From positions 124,001 through 188,000 of the IMG/VR virus record IMGVR_UViG_3300009181_000033: 64,000 nt of DNA, one strand, 5' to 3'. A model generated the notes under the pieces. It did no database searches. It was not told where the DNA came from and saw only the letters and a program-made list of their open reading frames with translations. Position numbers and translations under genes: made by a program. This document shows positions 9,622 to 58,279 of the stretch, piece by piece; the stretch's first letter is position 1, and each line of letters starts with the position of its first letter.

Positions 9622-10052
9622 GCATACACCTTGAAGGGGACTATTTTGTTCTTATAGCCATCATAGTCAAGTTTAAATTTTTCAAGACGAGGTTCTATGT
9701 CGTCTGATTTCACTATCCAAAACTGTGCCCCCGCAAGCATTGCTTTGTTGATCTCCCTTTTGTCTGATGAAGAAGAAATGATGCCGATTACCACTCCATT
9801 CCCATAAACGTGATTTATTCTTCTCACCAATTCTATTCCATCAACTGAAGATCCGACAAGATTAAGATCAACAAAAACGCAATCAGGTTTCTTCATCTCC
9901 CCGGCTTGCCATTTTTGGCATAGACGCTCTGCTTCCTCGGCAGAATTGACTGTCATAAGATGAAGAGTGATATCGAGCAAATTACATACATCTTCAAATA
10001 CAAGATGAAATAAATTTTCATCATCTACTAAGAGGAGCGAATCGATTAACAT
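9618..10052 (-). CDS. Stand-alone response regulator receiver domain
   Basis: LLVDDE, phospho-acceptor FVDLNL, ISSS, conserved Lys in IVKS; no output domain. Confidence 0.9.
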   Translation of the reverse strand: MLIDSLLLVDDENLFHLVFEDVCNLLDITLHLMTVNSAEEAERLCQKWQAGEMKKPDCVFVDLNLVGSSVDGIELVRRINHVYGNGVVIGIISSSSDKREINKAMLAGAQFWIVKSDDIEPRLEKFKLDYDGYKNKIVPFKVYA

Positions 10053-11635
10053 TTGAGCCTTACCTTAAGCAAAGTGCCTTGTTGTAGTGTTTCACATGAA
10101 ATATTGAAACCATGTTCATTTAGGATGGCAACACAAATGGAAAGACCAAGACCAGTGCCAGTTTCCTTCTGGCCTGCCCGACGCATATAAGGCTGAGAAT
10201 ATCTCATGAAATCCTCCTGAGACATGCCCCTGCCGTTATCTTGGATGCCGAGTGTGTTTTCATCAACCATAAATATGCGCACACATTTCGTTGGTGAATC
10301 ATTATATTTTAATCCATTGCGAATTAAATTATCTATCGCTGTGCAGAACAAAGACTCATTCACTTTTGCGTAAGAAAGCTGATCCACAGTAACTTGGTCC
10401 CTGTAAGCGATTAGACTTAAATAATCCATTAGCATCTTCCTTAAGTCACATCGTTCAATCTCTAAGGCCTTATCTTCCCTGACTAGGCTGGTGAACTCTT
10501 TGACGCCTTTGTAGACGCGCTGTGTATGTGCCAGACCTTCTTTCAGTAATTTTATTGGTGATTCTAGCTTGTATTTTTCAATGACTTCCTTGGGCAAACG
10601 TCGCTCTAAAGACGTAACGCCACGTGGCATATAGGTGTTGATCCCGCTGTGCATGTCATGTCGCAGAATTTTTGCGGCGTGTTCGAGATATGAATTCTTT
10701 TTGTTAAGTTCCTTTATTGACTCAACAATTTGTGTCACATCCTGGCGAACTGAGGAGTAACCCGTCAAATTTCCATTGGTGGGATTAAAGTGTGCCTTGA
10801 TGTATGTGTCGACATAATGAAGCCTTCCATTTTTTGACTTATTGGTCACCACTGCATGCCACACCTCACCCTCGTGTACCGTGGTGTGATACATGTCTTC
10901 CCAAAAATCTTTAGTGTGAAGGCCCGAGCTGACCACACTGTGATCCTTGCCTATCAAGTCTGACAATTTCCAGCCTGAAACATCAACAAATTTCTTGTTG
11001 GCATAGGTGATCTTTCCTTCTGCGTCTGCCTTTGAAAATAAAGTTGCCTGATCGACAAGTTCATTTTGTTCAACAAGGCCCTCTATCTCGAGTAGTTTTT
11101 TCTCGAGGCTTATTCCTTCCTTTACGGAATGTGCCATGGAATAGAGCGGGGCGAGGAGCTTTGCAAAATTAACTTCCTCCCTTGTCCAAATCCTTGGTTT
11201 GTAACTTTCTATGCAAATAACGCCCAAAACATTTCTGTGATAAATTATTGGAACATCCAACATTGACTTGACGCCTGAAGGATGAAGGTAATCTTGCACG
11301 AGGCACGACGTAGCTGGATGATGCTCGGCATCGTCAGCAACAATGACGGGGTCCACCGAGAGAAAATGAAAATAAGGCAAATATTTCCTCACTTCAATTT
11401 CATCACCTTGCCGAAAGCAATTTTCATTTTTGACGTACATTTGTTCGCATTCTATCGAACTCTTGTTTTTAGTGTACAGCCAAACGGAGGCTCTGTCGAT
11501 TTGTAGGACATGAGCAACTTCCTTGGTTAGAATCTTTGACCCTTCCGATGTTTTTCCTTCGTAAAATAGCTTATTTTGTGATTGACATACCAACAAGTCA
11601 GTCAGTTTGTTTTTGTAGCTTTTTGTAGGAGACAT
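10046..11635 (-). CDS. Cytoplasmic GAF-PAS sensor histidine kinase
   Basis: GAF (SMLDVPI...GVICIE), PAS (ITYANKKF...GEVWH), H-box LRHD, N-box DNLIRNGLKY, G1 DNGRG, G2 GTGLGL. Confidence 0.92.
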   Translation of the reverse strand: MSPTKSYKNKLTDLLVCQSQNKLFYEGKTSEGSKILTKEVAHVLQIDRASVWLYTKNKSSIECEQMYVKNENCFRQGDEIEVRKYLPYFHFLSVDPVIVADDAEHHPATSCLVQDYLHPSGVKSMLDVPIIYHRNVLGVICIESYKPRIWTREEVNFAKLLAPLYSMAHSVKEGISLEKKLLEIEGLVEQNELVDQATLFSKADAEGKITYANKKFVDVSGWKLSDLIGKDHSVVSSGLHTKDFWEDMYHTTVHEGEVWHAVVTNKSKNGRLHYVDTYIKAHFNPTNGNLTGYSSVRQDVTQIVESIKELNKKNSYLEHAAKILRHDMHSGINTYMPRGVTSLERRLPKEVIEKYKLESPIKLLKEGLAHTQRVYKGVKEFTSLVREDKALEIERCDLRKMLMDYLSLIAYRDQVTVDQLSYAKVNESLFCTAIDNLIRNGLKYNDSPTKCVRIFMVDENTLGIQDNGRGMSQEDFMRYSQPYMRRAGQKETGTGLGLSICVAILNEHGFNISCETLQQGTLLKVRLKC

Positions 11636-21526: not shown

Positions 21527-21729
21527 GTTCTCTCCAAGAATAAATCGTCATTTACTCCATTTAGTTCGATTAAGGCGGACTCCAAATGCACCTGTAATCT
21601 ATAAGATCCTTTTTTTGTCCACATGACGACCCAAGAATCTGGTTCATCAGATTCTTGGATAATGACACCAATGTTTCTGGAATCAGGTTCCCATCTAGAA
21701 GATTTTATGACCAATGAACCAGGGTTCAT
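21511..21729 (-). CDS. Small hypothetical protein (KOW/SH3-like)
   Basis: PGSLV...IGVII...VVMW pattern; overlaps the groEL stop. Confidence 0.5.
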   Translation of the reverse strand: MNPGSLVIKSSRWEPDSRNIGVIIQESDEPDSWVVMWTKKGSYRLQVHLESALIELNGVNDDLFLERTCTSK

Positions 21730-23357
21730 CGTGAAGAATTATTTTCCTCTACAATCACAGCATCAAGAGATAAGAATGTTGAAGCAACAGAGGCTGCGTT
21801 CTTCAGGGCTGTCCTAGTTACTTTGACAGGATCTATCACGCCAGTTTCAATTAAATTTTGATATTCAAATGTAGAAGCGTTCCAGCCAGTTAGCTCACCT
21901 GAGTCTCTACGCCTATTCAATTCGTTGATTATAACGTCCTTGCTTTGTCCTGCGTTTTCAGATATTCTGCTGATCGGAGCGACACAAGCATCCAATATAA
22001 CCTTAGCCCCCAAACCGAATTGGTCAACTGAATTTATCTTTCCAGATGACAATTTTCTCCAAACCTCAAATAAAGCCATGCCTCCACCTTGAACTATTCC
22101 TTCATCGACAGCAGCTCGTGTTGCATGAAGAGCATCTTCGATGCGATACTTCCTTTCAATCATTTCTACTTCAGTTGAGCCGCCGACCTTAATCAAAGCC
22201 ACACCAGAAGAAAGTTTGGCTATTCTGGTTTTTAATTTTGTTACTTCATCAAGTGTTAAGGAAATGTCACGCAATTGTGTTTTTAGCTCCAATGTGTGTC
22301 GATCGACATTTTCCTTAGTGGAACCAGAAGAAACCAAAGTACAGTTATCTCTTGTGACGACGACCTTCTTCAATGTGCCAAGGTCAGCTAGTGTTACTTG
22401 TTGCATCTTCACACCTGTGGAGGCTGAAACTATCTTTGCATCTGTCAAGATGCTAATGTCCCTCAAAAGATCATCCTTGTGTTGGCCGTAACCTGGTGAT
22501 TTGATTGCAACAACAGGAAGCGCACCATTGACTCTGTTAACAACAAGTCCTTGAAGGGCTTCACCCTCAACGTCGTCAGCGATAATGAGAAGCGGTGTCT
22601 TTGACTGTGATATCTTTTCGAGAAGAGGAATCATTTCCCTCATGCTGCTGATTTTATGATCAGTCAGCAAAACTCTTACATCGCTATAGGCTGCGTGCAT
22701 CTTCTCTGGATTTGTCACAAAGTAAGGAGAAAGATATCCTCTCTCAAATTGCATTCCCTCGACGAGATCCAAACTGGTCGACATTCCTTTTGCGTCTTCA
22801 ACTGTGATGATTCCATCATTGCCGACTTTTGTCATTGCATCAGCAATCAATTCACCAATTTTTCTATCTCCATTTGCTGAGATAGTTGCAATTTGGGCTA
22901 TTTCTTCTGTCGACGTTAATTGCTTTGCTTCTTCTTTCAAGAGCTGCAAGGCTACATTTAAAGTTTTTTCTATGCCGTCACAAAGTTCTTCTGCATCATA
23001 GCCTGCTTCTAATAACTTCATGCCAGATTTCACCATGGCATGTGTCAAAACGGTTGACGTCGTTGTTCCATCACCTGCAATGTCATTTGTTTGTTCAGCA
23101 GCTTGTCTAATTAGCTGAGCTCCCATTCTCTCGATTGGATCTTTTAATCTAATTGACTTGCTAACTGTCACTCCGTCCTTAGTGACAATGGGTGATGAAT
23201 TTTCATCTTGTTGTATGAGAACAGTCTTGCCTTTAGGACCAAGGGTACAACCAACAGCATTAGCTACTATTTCAACACCCTTAAACAAAGATTTTCTTGC
23301 ATCAGTTGAAAAAACAACACGTGTTGTAGAAGGCAATTTAGTTTCATGTTCAATCAT
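21726..23357 (-). CDS. groEL: Chaperonin GroEL
   Basis: TLGPKG, TKDGVTV, AGDGTTT, EGMQFERGYLSPYF, GVIDPVKVTR; lacks the GGM tail. Confidence 0.97.
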   Translation of the reverse strand: MIEHETKLPSTTRVVFSTDARKSLFKGVEIVANAVGCTLGPKGKTVLIQQDENSSPIVTKDGVTVSKSIRLKDPIERMGAQLIRQAAEQTNDIAGDGTTTSTVLTHAMVKSGMKLLEAGYDAEELCDGIEKTLNVALQLLKEEAKQLTSTEEIAQIATISANGDRKIGELIADAMTKVGNDGIITVEDAKGMSTSLDLVEGMQFERGYLSPYFVTNPEKMHAAYSDVRVLLTDHKISSMREMIPLLEKISQSKTPLLIIADDVEGEALQGLVVNRVNGALPVVAIKSPGYGQHKDDLLRDISILTDAKIVSASTGVKMQQVTLADLGTLKKVVVTRDNCTLVSSGSTKENVDRHTLELKTQLRDISLTLDEVTKLKTRIAKLSSGVALIKVGGSTEVEMIERKYRIEDALHATRAAVDEGIVQGGGMALFEVWRKLSSGKINSVDQFGLGAKVILDACVAPISRISENAGQSKDVIINELNRRRDSGELTGWNASTFEYQNLIETGVIDPVKVTRTALKNAASVASTFLSLDAVIVEENNSSR

Positions 23358-23363
23358 GCCAAA

Positions 23364-23393
23364 ATTTTAATGCAAAAAATCTACAAAGTACAA
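23364..23393 (-). promoter_or_regulatory. Sigma70-like promoter, leaderless class (groEL)
   Basis: TTGTAC-18nt-TAAAAT-6nt-ATG. Confidence 0.6.
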
Positions 23394-23394
23394 A

Positions 23395-23679
23395 TCAAAT
23401 TTTTTCTCTCGTAATTTTTAACCAAACTGGTCTTCCAGACTTCCAAGCTATGGCTACCCGGCCGGCCTTATAGTCTTTAAGAACATTTTTTAATGTAAAT
23501 TTTTGTTGTTCGTCAACAACCTGTTCAATATATTTTTCTAATCTGTGCTCCGAATAATCTCGGACATGCTTTAGAGACGACAGTTGAAATTGTGAGATGT
23601 GCATGTAAAATTCGGTGCAATACTCTCCAGGTAATAATTTCGGTCCTCTAGGTATTTTTGTCGCCATAACAGACTTCAT
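23395..23679 (-). CDS. Hypothetical protein
   Basis: 94-aa ORF; ATACTTA upstream. Confidence 0.55.
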   Translation of the reverse strand: MKSVMATKIPRGPKLLPGEYCTEFYMHISQFQLSSLKHVRDYSEHRLEKYIEQVVDEQQKFTLKNVLKDYKAGRVAIAWKSGRPVWLKITREKI

Positions 23680-23769
23680 GTTTTCATTTCTTTCATAAGT
23701 ATGAATACAACATGATTGTTCATCGGAACTTTAATGCCTTAAAGTAAATTAGTCAATTAAATTACTTAA

Positions 23770-24702
23770 TCACAATGGAACATTAAAGTCTCTAGACATG
23801 TTAAAGACCGCTAGATTTTTCATTTTTGCTTCGACCTCTACGTCGATTGTGTCTTCACGAAGAGACTTCAGTTGACACTCAGGAACATAGTGAATCATGT
23901 TACTGTGTTTACGTCGATCAATAAATGAGCCATTTTCTAGACCGGGTTCTGTGTTGCTGATGTGCTGCAACGGTCTAATGCCTGTTGGCCATGTTTCCTT
24001 GGTGACACTAAAAGCCTCGTCCATCGTAAGTTCACCATCATTGAAAGTGTGATGATGAGAATCAAAAACGACTGGAACACCTGTTTCCTGGTAAACAGGA
24101 AGCAGATCGACAACATTGTATCCCATCTCATCATTCTCGAGAGTGAGACGCTTTCTGACTCGATCTGGAAGTGACTTAATGTGGTTGATGAGCCTCGATG
24201 ATCGATCTCGCTTGCCACCATGAATATTGATTGCGTATTTAGGACTGTGATCGAGACCCATCATGTCGAACATCCAGCCGTGCTGGTCGAGTTCAATAAA
24301 TGCTTTTTCGACAACAGAATCTGTGTCAGAAGACAGAACACAAAATTGACCAGGATGTGTTGAAACACGAATGTCTTTCGACTTAATGAAGTCGCCAACC
24401 ATTTTTAAATAGGAAATAACTTCGGCATTGTCCCACAATGCCCGATCAACTTGATCTGCGAGAGGAAACATTGCAGATGAAATTCTAAAGAGCCTGACAC
24501 CTTGTTTGTGAATCTTAGGCAACATGGTTGAAAGATTCCTTACATTATTTACATATGTGCCCTTAATTTGGTCGGGCGTGTACTTGCCGGATTTATACCT
24601 ACCGAGCTGCAGTACACGCTCTTCCATTTCATTAATAAAATTTACTTTGCCGCTACGTGGTTTTACTTGTTCTTTGAGGTAGTGACAGCAAATGCCTAGC
24701 AT
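23770..24702 (-). CDS. uvsE: UV damage endonuclease
   Basis: FRISS, HPGQF, INIHGG, LTLEND, VFDSHHH, EVEAKMK. Confidence 0.93.
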   Translation of the reverse strand: MLGICCHYLKEQVKPRSGKVNFINEMEERVLQLGRYKSGKYTPDQIKGTYVNNVRNLSTMLPKIHKQGVRLFRISSAMFPLADQVDRALWDNAEVISYLKMVGDFIKSKDIRVSTHPGQFCVLSSDTDSVVEKAFIELDQHGWMFDMMGLDHSPKYAINIHGGKRDRSSRLINHIKSLPDRVRKRLTLENDEMGYNVVDLLPVYQETGVPVVFDSHHHTFNDGELTMDEAFSVTKETWPTGIRPLQHISNTEPGLENGSFIDRRKHSNMIHYVPECQLKSLREDTIDVEVEAKMKNLAVFNMSRDFNVPL

Positions 24703-24739
24703 AAAAATATCTTAATGCGCTGACATGCAATTTGTCACC

Positions 24740-26071
24740 CTATGCCAGCTTAGATTCTCTCAGCTCATTAATCAACTTTTTCTTTTTTTGAGCGTAATAT
24801 TTACTATTTTTCTTGCCTCTATTCATCAAAGCACTAAGAGCGCTGATTTCCTCAGAGTTGTTTTTTGATTCAAGCTTATCAATTACCTTTGAAATATCAT
24901 CATCTTCCGAGTCAAACATTCCTTTCACTCGTTGTGCCAATTCCTTCGTGGAATTTTCAGCTTCCTCACTGGTCATGAACCTGCAACGCTTCACATACTC
25001 CTGGATGAAAGCGATTGGCCAGTCTTTTACAGTGTCGAATGAGTCCGCGTGATCGGTCCCTAAAACATTCCTAACAACATCGCCATCCATTTGCTTGATG
25101 TGAATCAGTTCATCAAACCTACCCGGCCTGAGAATTGCATTGTCCAATCGATTCTTGTTATTGACGGTTGCAATAACGAGCTTAGTGTGCCTTTGAAAGT
25201 GTTCCAGTGCTTCTAGCATTGATGCTTGATCACCAAGTCTATCAAAATCGTCGATGATGACAGCATCAGGTTCAAAAATGCCGAGAGCCTCAAAAATTGT
25301 TGATGGTGAAATGTTGGCTATATCCTCCACCCTAATTCTAAATGACCTAAGTCCCAGGCTGGAAATGATCGTCCTGGCCAAGGTGCTCTTGCCCGTGCCT
25401 GGAGGCCCATATAAAAGAACTGATCTTGATACGTCAGCATCGATGCATTTCTTTAAATAAGCTGAATATTCCTCGGCTTTTTTTGACGGCATAGGATTAA
25501 AGGCATCATCGATCTCTAAATCAACATTGCAGTTGTCGTAATCGCTATTCTTGTTATTAATTCTTCGAAGAACGATGTTCTCATCCTTGAGCATCGACCA
25601 GAGCTCTTTCTTGATCAATTCTCTTGCGATGTCATATTTGTCGACTTCAACACAAAGCCTATCAACAAAATTAGATCTAGAATTGAAGACATAACCAATT
25701 TTTACGTCTCTCTCCTTGTCCAGCTGAAGAATGCGAATGGTCACGGCGTCATCAGAAGTCTTGATAGATTTATATGGTTTTTTTTGGAGGGCGGCAAGAA
25801 TCATTTTGTTAAAATCAAGAGGATAAGGATTTTCCCACTTGTCGTCAAAATAGTCATCAGGCCAAACCTCCATATCATCAACAATAACTCTGCCGATGAG
25901 GGCTGCAGATTGTATCGCAGTCATCATGTTCTGTTTTTGAATGAAAGGCTGGGCCGCATTTATGATCTCGGTGCCCATTCGAAACAATCTTTTTACACTG
26001 GCAACATTGAAAAAATCCCTAAATTTGTCGGATGTCCCTGGTTCAACAATAAGATCATTGATTTTTTTCAT
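24740..26071 (-). CDS. AAA+ ATPase
   Basis: GPPGTGKS, IIDDFD, SRH LDNAILRPGRFD; start placed at MKKIN (alternative 26152). Confidence 0.85.
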   Translation of the reverse strand: MKKINDLIVEPGTSDKFRDFFNVASVKRLFRMGTEIINAAQPFIQKQNMMTAIQSAALIGRVIVDDMEVWPDDYFDDKWENPYPLDFNKMILAALQKKPYKSIKTSDDAVTIRILQLDKERDVKIGYVFNSRSNFVDRLCVEVDKYDIARELIKKELWSMLKDENIVLRRINNKNSDYDNCNVDLEIDDAFNPMPSKKAEEYSAYLKKCIDADVSRSVLLYGPPGTGKSTLARTIISSLGLRSFRIRVEDIANISPSTIFEALGIFEPDAVIIDDFDRLGDQASMLEALEHFQRHTKLVIATVNNKNRLDNAILRPGRFDELIHIKQMDGDVVRNVLGTDHADSFDTVKDWPIAFIQEYVKRCRFMTSEEAENSTKELAQRVKGMFDSEDDDISKVIDKLESKNNSEEISALSALMNRGKKNSKYYAQKKKKLINELRESKLA

Positions 26072-26111
26072 ACGATTGTCTTTTACCCTACTATCAAATT
26101 TTGGTTTGTTT

Positions 26112-26957
26112 TTATTTTTGGTGTGTTGGACACCAATGAATGATTCTCCCATTCGAATCCTCTTCTCTCACAACCTCGTTGCCAAGAGGATCAATCTTTT
26201 TTCCATAAACCTTGAAGCTGAACTGTGCAGAGCCAACTGAGTCATTGGCCGTCCTATATGTCTTTATGGTTGCACCTTGTGAAAGGTATGCCTGTTTAGA
26301 AATGACCACAGTCTTTTCGTGCAAATCAACATATTCCTGGGGAGTGATGTCAGTTACACACCTCCAAGGATCAACTTTACAATCATACAGAATTTCCGAA
26401 CGGAGATAATTTCCTATGCCACTGATCATCTTTTGATCCATGAGTGCCTCGCAAATTGCTTTATTGGGTTTCTTAAGGATCATTTTTGCAAATGTTTCTG
26501 CGGTCAAATTCTCATCAAAGATGCATGGTCCAATTGATAACAACTTCTTCCTGTGTTCCTCTTCAGAGGACACAAATTTAATGGTGCCAAAGTGTCTCAT
26601 GTCATTGAAGAACAGCGTTCTTGAATCTCTTGTGATAGGTACACCTGAACCATTGAAATTAATGGAGAAGCATGTGTGATTGTTCCTTGAGGTAAACCAC
26701 CCACCCGCCATGCCATATGTGCAATGCATATACCACCTGTTGCCAGATGATGATCTGAATGACCACCACATGAACTTGCCTTTGACGTCGATAGATTCGA
26801 CCAACAAAGGAAGTTCCTTGGAAATTTGATCATACCCTATGGGTGAAGAGGTTTTGTATCTCCCCGCACTTCCAATTTCAAGTTTATGAATTTTATTGCC
26901 GACCAAAATTTGAGAAATGACGTCTCTTGAGTGTCTAAGCTCCGGGCCTTCAGGGAT
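26112..26957 (-). CDS. Fpg/Nei-family DNA glycosylase (Nei/NEIL-like, zincless finger) with an ATC start codon
   Basis: The frame extends upstream of the track ORF to ATC-CCT-GAA-GGC-CCG-GAG (xPEGPE); KGK, YGMAG, H2TH motif LMDQKMISGIGNYLRSE. Confidence 0.9.
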   Translation of the reverse strand: MPEGPELRHSRDVISQILVGNKIHKLEIGSAGRYKTSSPIGYDQISKELPLLVESIDVKGKFMWWSFRSSSGNRWYMHCTYGMAGGWFTSRNNHTCFSINFNGSGVPITRDSRTLFFNDMRHFGTIKFVSSEEEHRKKLLSIGPCIFDENLTAETFAKMILKKPNKAICEALMDQKMISGIGNYLRSEILYDCKVDPWRCVTDITPQEYVDLHEKTVVISKQAYLSQGATIKTYRTANDSVGSAQFSFKVYGKKIDPLGNEVVREEDSNGRIIHWCPTHQK

Positions 26958-26994
26958 TGGAATAACCCTCCTTTCAGCGTTTCTGCGTTATTTG

Positions 26995-27690
26995 TTATTT
27001 GGTAACAAGAATATTTGAAGTCAACATCCAGCCCCAAATCGAATCTGCCCAAAATTTATAACCGGCGGGCGTGGAATGAATCCCATCCTCAGATAAAGGC
27101 ACATCGATCGCTCTAGTGTCGTAGAATAAAGGTGCTACTTCAGAAATGTATTGACGAACAATCGATGATCTAAACAAAAGTTTTTTCTTGAATTCTGGCG
27201 GTCCGACCCAAACCAACTTGGCTCCAGAGGCTTCCACCGACTCAACAAACTTTAAATAGACTTCCTTATTTCTCTCCAACCATTCCTGATTAGCGACCGA
27301 ATCGTTGGTTCCCAATGAAACAACAACGAGAGATGGTTTGTATTTTGTCAAATCGTGGGCAATCAATGAAATCCAACGCTTGGTGGTCGAACCCAAAATA
27401 GCGTGCAAATAAGCTTCGTAATTGTTACCCCTCAGAATTTTCTCCAAATGGGGACCAAAACCCATCCCCAAAGAGTCGCCTACGATTAAGACTCTTTTGC
27501 CGCTAGGAATTAGTGGAAAAACTTTTTTTGGCAACACATCTTCGCTTACAACATCAGGCGATATCGGTGATGAAGGATCGATTGATGAATCGATTACTAC
27601 AGTAGAGTCCTCCCACTCGGCTGGAAATTGTGACTGGTGATAACCAGCAGTCATTCCAAGAATCATCATAGAAAATTTCTTCACTTCCAT
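26995..27690 (-). CDS. SGNH/GDSL hydrolase, probably exported
   Basis: IVGDSL, SLGTND, DGIH. Confidence 0.85.
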   Translation of the reverse strand: MEVKKFSMMILGMTAGYHQSQFPAEWEDSTVVIDSSIDPSSPISPDVVSEDVLPKKVFPLIPSGKRVLIVGDSLGMGFGPHLEKILRGNNYEAYLHAILGSTTKRWISLIAHDLTKYKPSLVVVSLGTNDSVANQEWLERNKEVYLKFVESVEASGAKLVWVGPPEFKKKLLFRSSIVRQYISEVAPLFYDTRAIDVPLSEDGIHSTPAGYKFWADSIWGWMLTSNILVTK

Positions 27691-28232
27691 TGCCCTCTGT
27701 AAAATGCCATTGCAACAGTAGCTGCAGAACCAACGTTTAAAGATCTTACTGCTCCCCATTGCGGAATGTATACAACTTTGCTGGCTTTCTTGAGTGACTG
27801 CGGAGACACACCAATCGACTCCTGTCCGAGAATTAGAATCGTTTTCTTTGACCATGAATGTTCGTAAATGCTGGTTGCACCTGGTACATTGTCAAAGACG
27901 ACAACCTCGTGCTCAGGATGTTGTTCGATAACCTCATCAATTGATGGCGAAAAACCAAGATGTTCGTAGTTTTGCATCCCACATGCACCACGCCTATCCC
28001 ACTTCCTTCGACCAACGATGAACACCTTTTCGCAAAGGAAGGCATTTGATGATCTGATCACAGTTGAAATGTTAAAGTCGTTACCAAAATTCTCTGCAGC
28101 TACAACGAGCTCTGAACGATTCTTGTCCTGGTCAGCAATGATAGCCTCATGGTTCCAGTATTTGTAATGATCAACAACATTCCTGTGATCAAACGGCTCA
28201 GCTGGCCAATTGTGGTTGACGAGATTGCTCAT
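27681..28232 (-). CDS. TrmH/SpoU-family (SPOUT) RNA methyltransferase
   Basis: NISTVIRSS, LILGQESIG, IPQWGAVRSLNVGSAA. Confidence 0.9.
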   Translation of the reverse strand: MSNLVNHNWPAEPFDHRNVVDHYKYWNHEAIIADQDKNRSELVVAAENFGNDFNISTVIRSSNAFLCEKVFIVGRRKWDRRGACGMQNYEHLGFSPSIDEVIEQHPEHEVVVFDNVPGATSIYEHSWSKKTILILGQESIGVSPQSLKKASKVVYIPQWGAVRSLNVGSAATVAMAFYRGQWK

Positions 28233-28314
28233 GTAATAATAGTAAACAACTTAACAAGATATTTGCACTCACAAAAACAAATAACTCTTCTTGGATTATA
28301 GTTAATAATTGAGT

Positions 28315-29490
28315 ATGTCAATCTTCAAAGAGCACAAAAGCAACGCCGATCGTGTAGCGGGGGATCGTCGAAGACACAAGGAAAAAATTGAGAAAGCAAT
28401 TCGTGAAGGAATTCACAATATAGTTGCCGACGAATCAATTATCGGTCAAGACGGAAAAAAGAAATTTAGAGTGCCCGTAAAAGGAATAAAAGAACACAGA
28501 TTTGTTTATGGGAATAATGGATCAAAACAGGTTGGATCAGCTCCTGGAAAGAACATACAGAAAGGCCAAAAAATAGGTGATGGCGACCAACAAGGACAAA
28601 GTGGTCAGCCAAACAAACCAGGCAGTGACAAGGGCGAAGAGTATTATGATGTTGAAATGTCGCTCGATGAACTAGCTGAATACCTATTTGCAGATTTGGG
28701 GCTTCCTGATCTCGAAAAGAAACAGTTGGCAAATATTGCATCAAAGAGATTCAAGAGATCTGGGTATAGGCCAGATGGAATTATTCCAAGGCTGGACAAA
28801 AAGAAGTCGGCCATAGCGAGAATAAAAAGAATGAAAGCCTCTGGGTTCAAAGAAGAAGAGGCTGAAGAAAGTGAATCATTTCCGTTCCATGAAGACGACT
28901 TGGTTTACCGACACTTTAAAATGAAAACGGAGCCCAATACAAACGCCGTTATTTTCTTTGTCATGGACGTTTCAGGTTCCATGACCGATGACAAAAAGTT
29001 TTTGGCCAGATCATTTTGCTTTTTATTGTATCAATTCATCAGAACAAAATACGAGAAGGTTGACGTCGTATTCGTCACACATGACATGGAAGCAAGAGAG
29101 GTCGACGAAAATGCGTTCTTTACAATATCGACATCTGGCGGAACCGTGGCATCAACAGGTCTCGAAAAAGTCAATGAAATAATAGAAGAAAGATACCCTC
29201 CTTCAAGCTGGAATTGTTATGCATTCCACAATTCAGATGGCGACAATTTCGGAACCGACAACGAGAAATATCTTCAAGAGCATGCGAAACTTGAGGAATC
29301 TGTTCAAATGTTTGGATATGTCGAGCTCGAACCACCTAGAAATTATGGCTACTATGACGAACTAAAACTGTCAGTACTGTTGGCGCCAAAGCTTGGAAAA
29401 AAATCCAGAAGCGTAAGGATAACTCGAAAAGAAGACGTGTGGCCTGCTTTTAAAGAAATTCTCGGCGCGGTCAAGAAAGACTCTGAGTGA
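28315..29490 (+). CDS. yeaH: YeaH/YhbH (DUF444) vWA-domain protein
   Basis: DRRRHKEKI, FFVMDVSGSM (MIDAS), SGGTVAS, SDGDN. Confidence 0.92.
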   Translation: MSIFKEHKSNADRVAGDRRRHKEKIEKAIREGIHNIVADESIIGQDGKKKFRVPVKGIKEHRFVYGNNGSKQVGSAPGKNIQKGQKIGDGDQQGQSGQPNKPGSDKGEEYYDVEMSLDELAEYLFADLGLPDLEKKQLANIASKRFKRSGYRPDGIIPRLDKKKSAIARIKRMKASGFKEEEAEESESFPFHEDDLVYRHFKMKTEPNTNAVIFFVMDVSGSMTDDKKFLARSFCFLLYQFIRTKYEKVDVVFVTHDMEAREVDENAFFTISTSGGTVASTGLEKVNEIIEERYPPSSWNCYAFHNSDGDNFGTDNEKYLQEHAKLEESVQMFGYVELEPPRNYGYYDELKLSVLLAPKLGKKSRSVRITRKEDVWPAFKEILGAVKKDSE

Positions 29491-29503
29491 ACAGGAGTGC
29501 AAA

Positions 29504-30823
29504 GTGGAATATAAACCAGAAGACTTAGAAATTTGGGACGAGAAAATCTGCAAAATAGCCAAGGAAAAATATTCCCTTGACTGGTTCCCAATAGAATACG
29601 AATTAATAGACTATTTTTCAATGTTGGGCGCAATGGCGTTCCATGGCCTTCCGAGTCACTTTAATCACTGGTCATTTGGAAAATCATTTGAAAGAACCCA
29701 ACACATGTATGACTTGGGCATGGAAGGACTGCCATACGAATTAATCCTCAATTCAAATCCATCACTAGCATACTTGATGAGAGAAAATCCATTATATCTT
29801 CAGATTCTCATCATGGCGCACTGTGTTGGCCACAGTGATTTCTTCAAAAACAATCGTACATTTAGATTCACGAGACCAGAAACAATCCATGGTCGCTGCA
29901 GGGCAGCCAAGAGAAGGTTTCAAGGGTATGTTGAGAACCCGAACATCGGTATTGAAAAAGTAGAAGAAGTTATTGACGCGTGTTATTCTGTGCAATTCCA
30001 GGCGCCAAAGCCTGGGTGGAGAAGAAGAACGAAACAGCAAATTGTAGAAGATTATCTCGATCGAAAAAAAGAAATGGCGTCGAGGGGACAAAAAATTAAA
30101 GAACTAGACATTGACAAAAAAGTTCTTGAACCTGACTATGACATTCTTGGATTTATCGCAGAAAATGGCGACATGCCTGAATGGAAGCGAGATATCATCG
30201 AGGTGTGCAGAGATGAAGCACAATACTTCTGGCCACAAATGATGACAAAAATCATGAATGAAGGCTGGGCGTCTGTTCATCATTACGACATTTTGCACGA
30301 ACTTGATCTTCCTCCAGAATTTCATTTGCCGTTCATTAAGTCGCACAATCAAGTAATTCGTCCTCATGTCGGAGGAATCAACCCATATCATCTTGGTTTT
30401 CATATGTTCAAAAGAATCAAAGAAAAATATGGTGAACAGGAATGTTTGCTGGCGAGAGAAGTCCACAATGACGCATCGTTCATAAGGCAATATTTGGACG
30501 AAGAAACATGTGTTGAATTAAACTTGTTCTCTTACGCCAAGAGGGGAAATAGCGGAATTTATATAGAAGAAGTTTCCGACAAGGATGGTTGGAAAAAAGT
30601 AAGAGATGATTTAGCGAAACAAGTCGGGGGTGGAGGAGTTCCGATCATCAAGGTGGTCGACGTGAGATGGGACGGCACTCTCATGCTAGATCATGACCAC
30701 GATGGTAGAGATTTGCTTTCAGATGAAGCCGGACACACGGTTTCACATCTCAAGACACTGTGGGGTAAACCTGTCTTTTTAATGACAGTCACCGACAATA
30801 AAGAATGTGTGATATCAAAATAA
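29504..30823 (+). CDS. spoVR: SpoVR/YcgB family protein
   Basis: HWSFGK, LPYELILNSNP, AHCVGHSDFFKNN, TKIMNEGWAS, NPYHLG. Confidence 0.93.
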   Translation: MEYKPEDLEIWDEKICKIAKEKYSLDWFPIEYELIDYFSMLGAMAFHGLPSHFNHWSFGKSFERTQHMYDLGMEGLPYELILNSNPSLAYLMRENPLYLQILIMAHCVGHSDFFKNNRTFRFTRPETIHGRCRAAKRRFQGYVENPNIGIEKVEEVIDACYSVQFQAPKPGWRRRTKQQIVEDYLDRKKEMASRGQKIKELDIDKKVLEPDYDILGFIAENGDMPEWKRDIIEVCRDEAQYFWPQMMTKIMNEGWASVHHYDILHELDLPPEFHLPFIKSHNQVIRPHVGGINPYHLGFHMFKRIKEKYGEQECLLAREVHNDASFIRQYLDEETCVELNLFSYAKRGNSGIYIEEVSDKDGWKKVRDDLAKQVGGGGVPIIKVVDVRWDGTLMLDHDHDGRDLLSDEAGHTVSHLKTLWGKPVFLMTVTDNKECVISK

Positions 30824-30859
30824 AAACCAAATATATATTTTATAATATCAAGAGGAACA

Positions 30860-32794
30860 ATGAGCCTAAAAGAATCACTTCTCCAACAAATACAACAAAA
30901 CAGAACAAAGTCAGAGTCTGAAAAGAAATTTTCTGGAACGCTTATGGATTACGTCGACCAGGTCGAAAAGGATCCCAGCATAGTCAAAACAGCTCACCAA
31001 AGACTAAATGAATCCATTAATGAGCATGGCTCATACGTCATGCCAGACTCAGATTCAAGAAAATACAAGGTATTTGATGGAGAATCCGTCAAAATCTATA
31101 AATACTTTGAAAATGAATTCTTCGGAATGGAGAATGTTGTTTCAAAGGTCATGAGCTTCCTCAATTCAGCAGCTCATCGTGGTGAAGAATCACGTCAAGT
31201 TCTCCTCTTCATGGGCCCTGTTGGCGCCGGCAAGTCCGCCCTAACAGAGCACATCAAGAAAGCACTGGAAGGTAAAAAATTCTATCACCTCAAGGGAGAC
31301 CCTCACCGTGGCGAACCCCTTCAGTTGATTCCACGTTCTCTTAGGGACTCATTTGAAAAACAATTGGGTGTTAAAATCGAAGGAGATATTTCGCCGATTG
31401 CTCGTCACAAGCTCCTCAATGACTACTCCGGACACTACGAAAATTTCGAGGTTGAGGAATCATCTGTGTCACAAAGGGCTCGCAGAGGCATCGGTGTCGT
31501 TCCTCCTATGGACGCCAACAGCCAAGATGTTTCTGTTCTAATCGGTTCTGTTGACATCAGCAAGCTGGACAAATACCCTGAGGATGACCCCCGTGCACTC
31601 TCGCTAACAGGCGCCTTTAACGTTGGCAACCGTGGTATCGTTGAGCTCGTCGAGGTCTTCAAGAATGAAATTGAGTTCCTCCACACCATCATCACAGCCA
31701 CACAAGAGAAGAGAGTTCCATCACCTGGAAAGAGCGACATGCTTCACTTCGATGGGGTCATTATCGCTCACTGTAATGAGGCTGAGTGGGTGAAATTCCA
31801 AGGCGAACACACCAACGAAGCTATCCTCGATCGTATCGTTAAAATCTCAGTGCCTTACTGTCTCGAGCTCAATCAGGAGCAGAAGATCTATGAGAAGATG
31901 TTGGGCAAGTCTGATTTTAAGGCTCACATTGCACCCCACACACTCAAGATAGCTTCCATGTTCTCGGTTATGAGTCGTCTTAAGCCTTCTTCTAAATGCG
32001 ACGCCCTCACCAAAATGAAGATCTATAATGGCGAAGACATTATTGAGAAGGGTCGAGTCAAGAAGGTCGATATTAAGGATCTTCGTGAAGAGGCAAAGCA
32101 TGAAGGCATGGACGGAATTTCAACCCGTTTCATCACCAAGGCAATCGATCACGCCCTGTCGAACTCCGACAAGAACATGGTTACTCCGATATCAATGCTT
32201 GACTCTTTGACTAGAATGGTAAAGGAGCAGATTACAGACGAAGCCTTCAAGAAATCTTGTCTCGAGCTTCTTCAGAAAACTGTTCGCGATGAATATCTCA
32301 AAATTTTGGAGACAGAGGTTTCCAAGGCATTCGTCAATGCATATGAAGAGCAGGCACAGAGCCTTTTCGACAACTATCTTGATCACGCCGAGGCTTATAC
32401 CACACGATGCAAACTAAAGGATCGTGTCACCAAGGAAGAACGTCATCCTGACGAGGAATTCATGAAGTCCATCGAGGAACAGATCGGCATCACAGGCTCT
32501 TCACGTGATGGCTTCCGTTCAGATGTCACAGCATACATGTTTGCCAAGATGCGCAAGGGCGAGAAGGTTGATTACACGACCTATGAGCCATTGAAGGAAG
32601 CAATCGAAGCTTATCTCATTAGCTCTGTGAAGTCGCTTGCTCGTATCGTCACCAAGTCCAAGAGCCGTGACAAAGAGCAGCAAGAGAAGTACTCTGAGAT
32701 GGTCAATACCTTGTGCAAGAAATACAATTACAATCCTGATTCAGCCGAAGAAATATTGGTGTTCTGCGCCAACAATCTCTTTAGAGATAGCTGA
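30860..32794 (+). CDS. prkA: PrkA/YeaG AAA+ serine kinase family protein
   Basis: EFFGME, GPVGAGKS, GNRGIVELVEVFK, NEAILDRI, EGMDGISTRF. Confidence 0.93.
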   Translation: MSLKESLLQQIQQNRTKSESEKKFSGTLMDYVDQVEKDPSIVKTAHQRLNESINEHGSYVMPDSDSRKYKVFDGESVKIYKYFENEFFGMENVVSKVMSFLNSAAHRGEESRQVLLFMGPVGAGKSALTEHIKKALEGKKFYHLKGDPHRGEPLQLIPRSLRDSFEKQLGVKIEGDISPIARHKLLNDYSGHYENFEVEESSVSQRARRGIGVVPPMDANSQDVSVLIGSVDISKLDKYPEDDPRALSLTGAFNVGNRGIVELVEVFKNEIEFLHTIITATQEKRVPSPGKSDMLHFDGVIIAHCNEAEWVKFQGEHTNEAILDRIVKISVPYCLELNQEQKIYEKMLGKSDFKAHIAPHTLKIASMFSVMSRLKPSSKCDALTKMKIYNGEDIIEKGRVKKVDIKDLREEAKHEGMDGISTRFITKAIDHALSNSDKNMVTPISMLDSLTRMVKEQITDEAFKKSCLELLQKTVRDEYLKILETEVSKAFVNAYEEQAQSLFDNYLDHAEAYTTRCKLKDRVTKEERHPDEEFMKSIEEQIGITGSSRDGFRSDVTAYMFAKMRKGEKVDYTTYEPLKEAIEAYLISSVKSLARIVTKSKSRDKEQQEKYSEMVNTLCKKYNYNPDSAEEILVFCANNLFRDS

Positions 32795-57613: not shown

Positions 57614-58279
57614 TTATTTTCCCGTCAAGAGATGGTAGGAGTCAATGAAATTCTGCCACTTGTCGTGGTTCTGACAGGTCGAAGAATAAACAGATAAATT
57701 AACCTGTTGCTTTGAATAGATCGGTTTAATGAAAAACTCTGTGATGGTCAGGATGTCAATAAGCAGCTCATTCTCAACATCAGAAGCCCTGAACACCAAT
57801 CGAGGAGAGTCCTTGAAATAATGTATCAGATTGAGGCACGTCACATCTTGAGGTGACAACATCTCACTGTCAGAATATTCTGTGAATGGATTTGCAAACC
57901 GAACAACACATCGACGTGTGTCTGGTTTCTTCGTAAGATGTTTCTTTATCTCTTCCAACAAGAATGTGTAATTGACATTGTTGTGTTTTTCACAAGCCAC
58001 CGTATAAATGGTTGACCTGAGAGAAGGTAGTTTCGTCAAGGATCGAAGACTAGGTCTTGATTCGGAAAATTCAGCAAAAACACTCGGCTTAATGTTGTGA
58101 CTTGCGAAGGCATTTCTTTTTGTGTCATAATAGGCTGCCACATCAGGAGATAAATTCTTAAGTCTCCTGATCGCCTCATCTCCCAAGGGAAGATTAGTCA
58201 CATCAAGACGAATGAGATAATCATCATTTTCGAATTCTGGCTTCTTTACTGTAATCATTTTTTCATCCATCAAAATCAC
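57614..58279 (-). CDS. Second, divergent thymidylate-synthase-fold protein
   Basis: PDTRRC, DVTCL, FRASD, LLIDI; lacks the HxY motif. Confidence 0.6.
   Translation of the reverse strand: MILMDEKMITVKKPEFENDDYLIRLDVTNLPLGDEAIRRLKNLSPDVAAYYDTKRNAFASHNIKPSVFAEFSESRPSLRSLTKLPSLRSTIYTVACEKHNNVNYTFLLEEIKKHLTKKPDTRRCVVRFANPFTEYSDSEMLSPQDVTCLNLIHYFKDSPRLVFRASDVENELLIDILTITEFFIKPIYSKQQVNLSVYSSTCQNHDKWQNFIDSYHLLTGK

What the first reader, a model, noticed from the sequence alone, without database searches (positions are those of the whole stretch)
26940..26976. Nei/Fpg glycosylase appears to start at a non-canonical ATC codon
Seen on the minus strand: AAAGGAGG-gttattcca-ATC CCT GAA GGC CCG GAG, a strong Shine-Dalgarno site 9 nt before ATC (26957-26955), giving (M)PEGPE in frame with the gene. 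No in-frame ATG is available. Established: Fpg/Nei enzymes need Pro2 as the free N-terminal nucleophile, so initiation must occur at this codon, and non-canonical starts are policed by IF3. Inference: either deliberate translational control linked to initiation-factor status, or an ATG-to-ATC mutation or sequencing error.
Basis: partly seen in the sequence, partly recalled or inferred. Interest (0 to 1): 0.6.

Follow-up and report, generated by a model that had tools for sequence, protein, structure and literature searches.

The report
Phage Nei glycosylase starts at ATC
A DNA-repair gene of a 298-kb phage really does begin at the rare start codon ATC, and about a quarter of its phage relatives also begin at ATT, ATC or ACG, so this is a recurrent trait that gene finders routinely mis-call rather than an error.

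Summary
On the minus strand, AAAGGAGGG (26974-26966) lies 8-9 nt upstream of ATC (26957-26955). CCT-GAA (Pro2-Glu3) follows, opening an intact 281-codon Fpg/Nei gene (26112-26957). No ATG, GTG or TTG lies between the in-frame stop (26990-26988) and TTG at 26906.

It is not an error. Three assemblies carry ATC. The closest relative (91% aa) has ATT behind the same Shine-Dalgarno (SD) site, and the next (83%) has ATG behind a weaker one. dN/dS is 0.06-0.25, and codons 2-18, upstream of the called TTG, show only synonymous changes.

The trait runs through the family. Among 121 distinct members of this almost purely viral Nei clade, the codon before the catalytic Pro is ATG 57, ATT 21, TTG 16, GTG 15, ATC 9, ACG 2 and GTT 1. 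That is 27% non-canonical, against 0 of 102 cellular mutM genes (p = 2e-10). The tree needs at least 25 switches. Near-cognate starts sit behind stronger SD sites. Two cultured Bacillus phages, G and Nachito, show ATT in their Fpg genes, and both are mis-annotated.

Most likely this is genuine near-cognate initiation that gives low output. Control by IF3, the initiation factor that rejects non-canonical starts, is plausible but untested. I could not get a read pileup. This is a new member of a known kind; interest is moderate to high.

The parts
26966..26974 (-). Shine-Dalgarno site AAAGGAGGG
   Evidence: The duplex with the anti-SD is -12.1 kcal/mol, which puts it in the top 1% of crude gene starts of this genome. 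The same motif stands upstream of ATT in the 91%-identical relative L171.
26955..26957 (-). Initiation codon ATC (near-cognate)
   Evidence: It aligns with the Met of MvNei1 and with position 1 of six NCBIfam models. It is identical in assemblies L169, L170 and L214. Relatives carry ATC or ATT at the same place.
26949..26954 (-). Codons for catalytic Pro2 and Glu3 (CCT GAA)
   Evidence: P2 and E3 are invariant in 40 aligned relatives. The Pfam PF01149 match starts at residue 2.
26112..26957 (-). Nei-like (MvNei1-like) Fpg/Nei family DNA glycosylase gene, 281 codons plus TAA (26114-26112)
   Evidence: Pfam PF01149, PF06831 and PF21025. PDB sequence match to MvNei1 over the full length, E 1.5e-40. 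Model pLDDT 91 and TM 0.84-0.85 to MvNei1. dN/dS 0.06-0.25.
26988..26990 (-). In-frame stop TAA that closes the frame 11 codons upstream of ATC
   Evidence: No ATG, GTG or TTG lies between it and ATC.
26904..26906 (-). TTG (codon 18), the start chosen by gene callers; probably not used
   Evidence: P0002. Codons 2-18 show 0 non-synonymous and 4 synonymous differences against L125, so the stretch upstream of TTG is translated.
26961..26963 (-). ATT two codons upstream, a rejected alternative start
   Evidence: Only 3 nt separate it from GGAGG. It would give MPIPEGPE, which moves Glu away from Pro. Relatives with other upstream sequence keep the near-cognate codon directly before Pro.
26259..26522 (-). 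H2TH DNA-binding domain (residues 146-233)
   Evidence: PF06831, E 1e-14.
26115..26207 (-). C-terminal finger that lacks a full set of zinc ligands (zincless type)
   Evidence: Most relatives have CPxGH...WCxxCQK where the window has DPLGN...HWCPTHQK. The KKxDPxGNxV motif is shared with MvNei1. The model has a beta-hairpin at 263-275, and R271 is invariant.
26995..27855 (-). Upstream SGNH/DUF459 hydrolase gene; its stop is at 26997-26995, 37 nt before ATC and in another frame
   Evidence: No terminator-like site or convincing promoter lies between the two genes.
21726..26080 (-). Downstream genes on the same strand: AAA ATPase (24740-26080), UvdE (23770-24702), Cpn60 (21726-23357)
   Evidence: Pfam. 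Nei stands next to UvdE, Cpn60 or the AAA ATPase in relatives L126, L127 and L128.

Best explanation
ATC at 26957-26955 is the real initiation codon of an intact, selected, phage-encoded Nei-like DNA glycosylase. By inference from established bacterial initiation, the 30S subunit is anchored by the unusually strong, correctly spaced Shine-Dalgarno site in an unstructured leader. Initiator fMet-tRNA then pairs with AUC with a third-position mismatch, and deformylase and Met aminopeptidase expose Pro as the catalytic N-terminus. The output should be a small fraction of what ATG would give. This is a property of the gene family, not of this genome. In a Nei clade found almost only on viral contigs, 27% of distinct members start at ATT, ATC, ACG or GTT and only 47% at ATG. 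The state has switched many times, and weak codons go with strong Shine-Dalgarno sites. The most likely purpose is a gene-local way to hold a potentially harmful glycosylase/lyase at a low level within a polycistronic phage transcript. That purpose is inferred and I put it at about 0.5. A possible by-product is sensitivity to IF3 or to the host's growth state.
For: Shown: the sequence and frame. The ATC aligns with the Met of solved MvNei1 and of six family profiles. P2, E3 and K61 are invariant. ATC stands in three assemblies. The closest relative has ATT with the same SD, and the next has ATG with a weaker SD. dN/dS is 0.06-0.25, and codons 2-18 show only synonymous changes. The census of 121 distinct proteins gives ATG 57, ATT 21, TTG 16, GTG 15, ATC 9, ACG 2, GTT 1, and no other codon ever appears. 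In 22 of 30 distinct near-cognate loci there is no canonical in-frame start after the upstream stop. The tree needs at least 25 switches. Cellular mutM controls give 0 of 102 (Fisher p = 1.8e-10). SD duplex medians are ATT -11.9, ATC -8.3 and ATG -5.9 kcal/mol (Mann-Whitney p = 1e-7); in independent pairs the SD follows the codon in 6.9 against 0.7, median p 0.039. The leader is less structured than shuffles. The same pattern occurs in the Fpg genes of cultured Bacillus phages G and Nachito. From the literature: AUC and AUU initiate at 1-2% of AUG in E. coli, with Met at the N-terminus (10.1101/063800). infC uses AUU or AUC as the target of IF3 (PMC5499595).
Against: There is no direct evidence of expression: no reads, transcripts, ribosome footprints or N-terminal peptides. 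The host is unknown, so E. coli efficiencies may not apply. A strong SD with a weak codon can also arise if a strong SD merely makes loss of ATG tolerable, which would be drift rather than design. The phylogenetically corrected SD test is only marginal (median p 0.039, range up to 0.73). If low output were the only aim, a weak SD with ATG would serve equally well. The complete absence of ATA among 30 ATH starts is not explained by the E. coli data.
Confidence: 0.75

Rival explanations
1. The weak start codon is tolerated drift, not a device. So few Nei molecules are needed that ATG decays freely to any near-cognate wherever a strong Shine-Dalgarno site keeps some initiation going. There is no regulatory meaning. 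Initiation is still at ATC.
For: The start-codon state is very labile, with at least 25 switches among 121 sequences. ATG relatives exist next to ATT and ATC ones. Near-cognates occur only where the SD is strong, as a permissive model predicts. The phages with AT-rich leaders and no SD all keep ATG.
Against: Cellular mutM, also a low-abundance enzyme, shows 0 of 102. ATC is shared by the window, L021, L126 and L127 at only 56-57% aa identity, although reversion needs one base change. ATC and ATT interchange between the window and L171 without passing to ATG. The absence of ATA, the transition product, argues against unselected mutation.
Confidence: 0.3
2. The ATC is a sequencing or assembly error, or a recent inactivating mutation, and the gene is dead.
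For: ATC differs from ATG by one base. E. coli data give about 1-2% efficiency. I could not get a read pileup.
Against: The sequence is identical in two JGI assemblies and one Logan assembly. The closest relative has ATT. Nine distinct ATC and 21 distinct ATT relatives exist. The 281-codon frame is intact, with dN/dS 0.06-0.25. The SD is in the top 1% of the genome.
Confidence: 0.03
3. Translation starts at TTG 26906, as gene callers say, giving a 264-residue protein without Pro2 and Glu3: a DNA-binding, non-catalytic protein.
For: TTG is the first canonical start in the frame. The public gene calls use it.
Against: The 17 codons upstream are identical in protein to relatives at 83% and 91% identity, with only synonymous differences. 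PEGPE is kept across the family. In my reading, no Shine-Dalgarno match precedes TTG. Truncated calls in relatives hide the same ATC (P0024/L127).
Confidence: 0.04
4. Initiation is at ATT 26963-26961, two codons upstream, giving Met-Pro-Ile-Pro-Glu; or ribosomes finishing the upstream SGNH gene re-initiate at ATC without a need for codon fidelity.
For: ATT is also a near-cognate and is followed by Pro. IPIPEGPE recurs in several relatives. The upstream gene ends 37 nt before ATC.
Against: Only 3 nt separate GGAGG from that ATT. Glu would be displaced from the N-terminal Pro. Most near-cognate relatives lack the upstream ATT. Distances to the upstream gene end are not shorter for near-cognate starts than for ATG starts (median 67 against 16 nt, p = 0.14; several exceed 400 nt).
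Confidence: 0.04

Closest known systems
infC (IF3) and pcnB of E. coli: AUU (AUC in some infC) initiation codons
   Same: A near-cognate AUH codon serves as the true start of a conserved gene, it lowers translation, and IF3 discriminates against it (10.1101/063800; PMC5499595).
   Different: Here the gene is a phage DNA glycosylase. The state is not fixed but switches among ATG, GTG, TTG, ATT, ATC and ACG within the family. IF3 dependence is untested, and there is no autoregulatory logic.
Enterococcus faecalis ebpA (ATT start) and Streptomyces sigR (GTC start)
   Same: Rare start codons shown to attenuate expression (ebpA, PMC4447247) or to place it under IF3 repression (sigR, PMC5472188). I know both only from the titles and abstracts listed.
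   Different: Those are single cellular genes with experimental proof. This is an uncultured-phage gene family with comparative evidence only. One relative (L255) has GTT at the start position.
Mimivirus Nei1 (MvNei1; PDB 3A42, 3A45, 3VK7, 4NRW)
   Same: It is the closest solved structure: a full-length match with E 1.5e-40, 32-34% identity and TM 0.84-0.85. It shares the MPEGPE N-terminus and the finger motif KKxDPxGNxV without zinc ligands.
   Different: MvNei1 begins with Met in the deposited chain. The window's gene belongs to a bacteriophage clade in which most members still have the CHCC zinc finger.
Cellular Fpg/MutM and Nei
   Same: Same fold, the same Pro2-Glu3-Lys catalytic set and the same H2TH domain.
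   Different: The window's protein scores below every NCBIfam equivalog cut-off. Cellular genes started with ATG or GTG in 102 of 102 cases examined.
Fpg of Bacillus phage G (gp292) and Bacillus phage Nachito
   Same: These are phage-encoded Fpg genes in which ATT directly precedes the catalytic Pro. In phage G an in-frame TGA lies 3 codons upstream. In Nachito the SD lies 5 nt upstream.
   Different: They belong to other clades of the family (PELPEV and PEIVEV types, about 25% identity to the window). Their records annotate other starts: a downstream ATG in G, and a GTG inside the SD in Nachito.

Membership tests
Fpg/Nei (H2TH) DNA glycosylase superfamily | Pro directly after the initiator residue, followed by Glu (catalytic N-terminal nucleophile and acid) | tested here: met
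   CCT GAA follow ATC. P2 and E3 are invariant in 40 relatives. They align to residues 2-3 of MvNei1 and of the family profiles.
Fpg/Nei (H2TH) DNA glycosylase superfamily | Conserved Lys of the G-K motif in the N-terminal beta-sandwich | tested here: met
   G60 and K61 are invariant in alignment A1 and align with TKGKF of MvNei1. The equivalence to E. coli Fpg and Nei residues is from my own knowledge of the motif.
Fpg/Nei (H2TH) DNA glycosylase superfamily | Helix-two-turn-helix domain | tested here: met
   PF06831, E 1e-14, 54.7 bits against a cut-off of 34.7.
Fpg/Nei (H2TH) DNA glycosylase superfamily | C-terminal zinc finger or zincless finger with the conserved Arg | tested here: met
   R271 and W275 are invariant. 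The model has a beta-hairpin at 263-275. The zinc ligands are incomplete (D, N, C, H in place of C, H, C, C), as in MvNei1. Metal content cannot be tested here.
Fpg/Nei (H2TH) DNA glycosylase superfamily | Overall two-domain fold | tested here: met
   Model pLDDT 91.2. Foldseek TM 0.84-0.85 to MvNei1 and 0.8 or more to MutM structures.
Fpg (MutM) or Nei equivalogs of bacteria | Score above the curated NCBIfam equivalog cut-off | tested here: not met
   The best is TIGR00577 at 134 bits against a cut-off of 203; endonuclease VIII scores 82 against 252. It should be filed as an Fpg/Nei family, MvNei1-like enzyme, not as MutM or Nei proper.
Genes with a true near-cognate (non-AUG/GUG/UUG) initiation codon, infC/pcnB type | A non-canonical codon at a position that must be the start, with no usable canonical start | tested here: met
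   In 22 of 30 distinct relatives the frame is closed upstream with no canonical start.
Genes with a true near-cognate (non-AUG/GUG/UUG) initiation codon, infC/pcnB type | Shine-Dalgarno site at working distance | tested here: met
   The spacer is 8-9 nt in the window and 5-9 nt in nearly all relatives. The duplex is -12.1 kcal/mol.
Genes with a true near-cognate (non-AUG/GUG/UUG) initiation codon, infC/pcnB type | Conservation or recurrence of the near-cognate codon in orthologs | tested here: met
   33 of 121 distinct proteins, against 0 of 102 cellular controls.
Genes with a true near-cognate (non-AUG/GUG/UUG) initiation codon, infC/pcnB type | A protein product shown to begin at that codon | not testable with these tools
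Genes with a true near-cognate (non-AUG/GUG/UUG) initiation codon, infC/pcnB type | Repression by IF3 | not testable with these tools
   This rests only on general knowledge. The phage encodes no IF3 C-terminal domain.

The most novel reading that the evidence does not exclude
The pairing of a strong Shine-Dalgarno site with an AUU/AUC start is a selected translational gate. Ribosomes are recruited efficiently, but start only when initiation fidelity is relaxed, for example when IF3 is low relative to 30S subunits, or under particular growth, ppGpp or temperature states. Phages would thereby tie synthesis of a base-excision enzyme to the host's physiological state. A further untested twist concerns the changes seen at the start codon's G. 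They are G-to-T and G-to-C, never G-to-A (0 ATA among 30 ATH). To my knowledge these are the transversions caused by the oxidised guanines that Fpg/Nei enzymes remove, so the gene's own dosage might be set by the damage it repairs.
Probability: 0.15. Interest if true: 0.8.

Novelty: new member of a known kind. Interest (0 to 1): 0.58.

Why it matters
Proven non-canonical start codons are very rare in bacteria. The Hecht preprint (10.1101/063800) counts two confirmed genes in E. coli. Fpg/Nei enzymes are unusual because chemistry fixes their first residue, so the start codon can be read from DNA alone.

Read that way, a phage-specific Nei clade shows ATT, ATC, ACG or GTT starts in 27% of distinct members and ATG in under half. 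The same is seen in two cultured Bacillus phages.

- **Annotation:** gene finders truncate or extend these genes, which removes or buries the catalytic Pro-Glu.
- **Translation biology:** the family is a natural series of leaders in which start-codon strength and Shine-Dalgarno strength vary together, and it can be tested directly in phage G or Nachito.
- **Phage biology:** it suggests that the dose of a DNA glycosylase is set gene by gene at the level of initiation.

Tried and rejected
1. **Read pileup.** Three assemblies served as a weaker substitute. I could not check whether the samples behind them differ.
2. **DNA search of the phage collection.** The nucleotide search found nothing. The protein search found only relatives at about 25% identity.
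3. **A genome-wide habit?** A scan of the 298-kb genome for a strong SD plus ATH/ACG opening a long frame found no enrichment and no other clean case. The trait is specific to the gene.
4. **A special phage initiator tRNA?** The genome has 14 tRNA genes. The two with anticodon CAT both have a paired 1-72 end, so they are not bacterial-type initiators.
5. **Phage IF3 or peptide deformylase.** None found.
6. **A regulatory RNA structure over the start.** The leader folds less well than 187 of 200 shuffles.
7. **Translational coupling or re-initiation as the general cause.** Rejected on distances to the upstream gene.
8. **Terminator or promoter between the upstream gene and nei.** No terminator-like site was found, and promoter-like matches were no more than chance.
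9. **First SD-compensation test.** With 51 sequences it was underpowered, with 5 independent pairs. It reached marginal support only with 121 sequences.
10. **Is the clade cellular?** A scan of one genome for each of 185,579 prokaryote species gave one good hit, a Bdellovibrionota MAG contig, and that hit also has ATT.
11. **Prior description.** Four full-text searches found no paper linking Fpg/Nei genes with non-canonical starts.

Full report
**1. The observation**

The minus strand reads gctgAAAGGAGGgttattccaATC CCT GAA GGC CCG GAG, with ATC at 26957-26955. The stop-to-stop frame is 26112-26987. The in-frame stop TAA lies at 26990-26988, and the ten codons between it and ATC contain no ATG, GTG or TTG. 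The first canonical start in frame is TTG at 26906, which is codon 18. Public gene calls use it and so produce a 264-residue protein that lacks the catalytic N-terminus (P0002).

**2. What the gene is**

From ATC the frame encodes 281 residues (P0001).

- **Domains:** Pfam finds the Fpg/Nei N-terminal domain from residue 2, the H2TH domain, and a weak match to the C-terminal finger.
- **Profiles:** six full-length NCBIfam Fpg/Nei models align from their position 1 to the end, but all score below their equivalog cut-offs.
- **Closest structure:** mimivirus Nei1 matches over the full length with E 1.5e-40, its Met aligned to the ATC.
- **Fold:** a model with pLDDT 91 superposes on MvNei1 with TM 0.84-0.85.
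- **Conserved residues:** P2, E3, G60-K61 and R271 are invariant in 40 relatives.
- **Finger:** the window's protein and its nearest kin have lost two of the four zinc ligands and carry the KKxDPxGNxV motif of the zincless MvNei1 finger. Most relatives keep CPxGH...WCxxCQK.

The gene sits on a 297,894-bp virus record with direct terminal repeats. On the same strand it lies between an SGNH hydrolase gene and genes for an AAA ATPase, UvdE and Cpn60. Relatives keep Nei next to UvdE, Cpn60 or the AAA ATPase.

**3. Error or dead gene?**

Neither. The identical sequence, ATC included, stands in three assemblies:

- the JGI contig that is the window's genome (L170);
- a second JGI assembly of 297,898 bp (L214);
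- a Logan assembly of run SRR5818192, a 97-kb contig (L169).

I could not check whether the samples behind these assemblies differ.

The closest relative (L171, 91% aa identity) has ATT behind the same AAAGGAGGG. The next (L125, 83%) has ATG behind a weaker cggagaaagca. dN/dS is 0.18-0.25 against L171 and 0.06-0.11 against L125. Codons 2-18, upstream of the called TTG, show four synonymous and no non-synonymous differences against L125. That stretch is therefore translated and under purifying selection.

I could not get a read pileup.

**4. The family-wide pattern**

I read the codon directly 5' of the catalytic Pro in relatives from IMG/VR, from JGI metagenomes and from single look-ups. Among 121 distinct proteins the counts are as follows.

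| Codon before Pro | Distinct proteins |
|---|---|
| ATG | 57 |
| ATT | 21 |
| TTG | 16 |
| GTG | 15 |
| ATC | 9 |
| ACG | 2 |
| GTT | 1 |

- No other codon occurs, so the position behaves as a start codon in every member.
- In 22 of 30 distinct near-cognate loci, the frame is closed upstream with no canonical start in between.
- Truncated or extended public gene calls hide these starts. P0024 and P0009 both proved to have ATC.
- On a tree, the non-canonical state needs at least 25 changes. In an earlier tree of 51 sequences, the window's well-supported group of 12 held ATT 4, GTG 3, ATG 3 and ATC 2.
- The clade is almost purely viral. A scan of one genome for each of 185,579 prokaryote species gave one good hit, on a Bdellovibrionota MAG contig, and that gene has ATT. 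The same assembly's own mutM has ATG.

**5. Controls**

Cellular mutM genes from two bacterial phyla, plus single genomes, gave ATG or GTG in 102 of 102 cases. Fisher's exact test against 33 of 121 gives p = 1.8e-10.

Within the window's own genome, a scan for a strong SD plus ATH or ACG opening a long frame found no other clean case. The trait therefore belongs to the gene, not to the phage's translation in general.

**6. Shine-Dalgarno compensation**

- Median anti-SD duplex energies are ATT -11.9, ATC -8.3, GTG -9.1, TTG -8.9 and ATG -5.9 kcal/mol. For near-cognate starts against ATG, Mann-Whitney p = 1e-7.
- In phylogenetically independent pairs (13 on well-supported branches), a strong SD goes with the weak codon in 6.9 pairs and against it in 0.7. 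The median sign-test p is 0.039. An earlier test with 51 sequences was underpowered.
- Spacers are mostly 5-9 nt.
- The window's SD is matched by only 2 of 269 crude gene starts in its genome.
- Its leader is less folded than shuffled controls.
- Relatives with AT-rich leaders and no SD all keep ATG.

**7. Beyond this clade**

The pattern also appears in the Fpg genes of cultured Bacillus phages, which belong to other clades of the family.

- **Phage G gp292:** ATT stands directly before PELPEVHS, with an in-frame TGA three codons upstream. The record annotates an ATG ten codons downstream.
- **Phage Nachito:** the sequence reads aaagagggtggttaaaATT CCT GAA. The record annotates a GTG inside the SD.
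- **Other isolates:** SP-10, Goe26, SBSphiC, YungSlug, SP-15 and the actinophage DSL-LC01 have ATG, and LIS04 has TTG.

**8. Mechanism**

What is shown: the codon, the SD, the open leader, the conservation and the selection on the gene.

What follows from established knowledge:

- Initiator tRNA can start at AUC or AUU at about 1-2% of the AUG level in E. coli, and Met is found at the N-terminus (10.1101/063800).
- AUU and AUC are non-canonical for IF3 and are its target in infC. Non-AUG starts are also sensitive to nutrient state and ppGpp (PMC5499595).
- Removal of Met before Pro would then expose the nucleophile.

What is inferred: the weak codon is kept to hold the dose of a glycosylase/lyase low within a polycistronic transcript, and it may be gated by IF3.

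The main rival to that purpose is tolerated drift behind a strong SD. Four observations speak against pure drift:

- the zero rate in cellular mutM;
- retention of ATC across 56-57% aa identity;
- ATC-to-ATT exchange without a return to ATG;
- the absence of ATA.

I also tested and rejected re-initiation after the upstream gene, a special phage initiator tRNA, a phage IF3 or deformylase, and the ATT two codons upstream, which has only a 3-nt spacer and would displace Glu.

**9. Comparison with what is known, and novelty**

Near-cognate initiation as a means of attenuation or control is a known kind. Examples are infC and pcnB, ebpA with ATT, and sigR with GTC. Four full-text searches found no paper that links Fpg/Nei genes with non-canonical starts.

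I therefore file this as a new member of a known kind. Its added value is that the trait recurs across a whole phage gene family. The family's chemistry allows the start to be read from DNA, and gene callers systematically get it wrong.

**10. Verdict**

- ATC as the true start: about 0.8.
- The gene is functional: about 0.85.
- The weak start is selected rather than merely tolerated: about 0.5.
- Gating by IF3 or host state: about 0.15.
- Interest: 0.58.

Noticed in passing
Relatives L021-L293 (censuses): Among 30 distinct ATH start codons there are 21 ATT, 9 ATC and no ATA. ATA is the single transition away from ATG, and in the E. coli data it initiates about as well as AUU or AUC. I have no explanation for this.
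   Followed up: partly
L255 (Ga0194129_10014819), start position: GTT stands directly before PEGPELKH, behind gaaaggcgggtattcca, with no canonical start in the 28 codons upstream. It is either a start with two mismatches (compare the GTC of Streptomyces sigR) or a dead copy.
   Followed up: no
L172 (Bacillus phage G, JN638751.1, gp292) and L177 (Bacillus phage Nachito, OP380492.1): Both cultured-phage Fpg genes have ATT directly before the catalytic Pro. Their GenBank CDS starts are misplaced: truncated by 10 codons in G, and extended by 3 codons from a GTG inside the SD in Nachito. In SP-15 (L181) the annotated start lies 24 codons upstream of an ATG preceded by an SD.
   Followed up: partly
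window 26115-26207 (-): The window's Nei and its nearest kin (P0003, P0007) have lost the zinc-finger ligands that most of the clade keeps, and they carry the zincless-finger motif of mimivirus Nei1. The phage clade therefore holds both zinc and zincless forms and is the closest sequence relative of MvNei1.
   Followed up: partly
window 28309-32794 (+): A complete DUF444 (YeaH-like), SpoVR and PrkA gene trio, normally a bacterial stress or sporulation-associated set, is encoded by this phage next to the repair genes (Pfam E 4e-105, 2e-112 and 4e-137).
   Followed up: no
window 21726-28232 (-): One same-strand run holds SpoU methylase, SGNH/DUF459 hydrolase, Nei, AAA ATPase, UvdE (UV-damage endonuclease) and Cpn60. 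Nei stands next to UvdE and/or Cpn60 in relatives L126 and L127, which suggests a conserved repair module.
   Followed up: partly
G000:C1:88512-91232 and scattered sites (outside the window): The phage genome carries 14 tRNA genes, including two tandem tRNA(CAT) genes with a paired 1-72 end. They are elongator Met or Ile2 type, not initiators. The window itself holds no tRNA gene.
   Followed up: partly
window 10046-11635 (-) and 58263-60029 (-): The phage also encodes a GAF plus HATPase_c (histidine-kinase-like) protein and a carbamoyltransferase.
   Followed up: no
L087/L094 (Bdellovibrionota MAG JBBAUR010000009.1, 89-kb contig): This is the only good hit of the phage Nei clade in the prokaryote genome collection. 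It has an ATT start behind tgaggaggtgtacc. The contig may be a phage or prophage binned into the MAG. The same assembly's mutM, on another contig, starts with ATG.
   Followed up: partly
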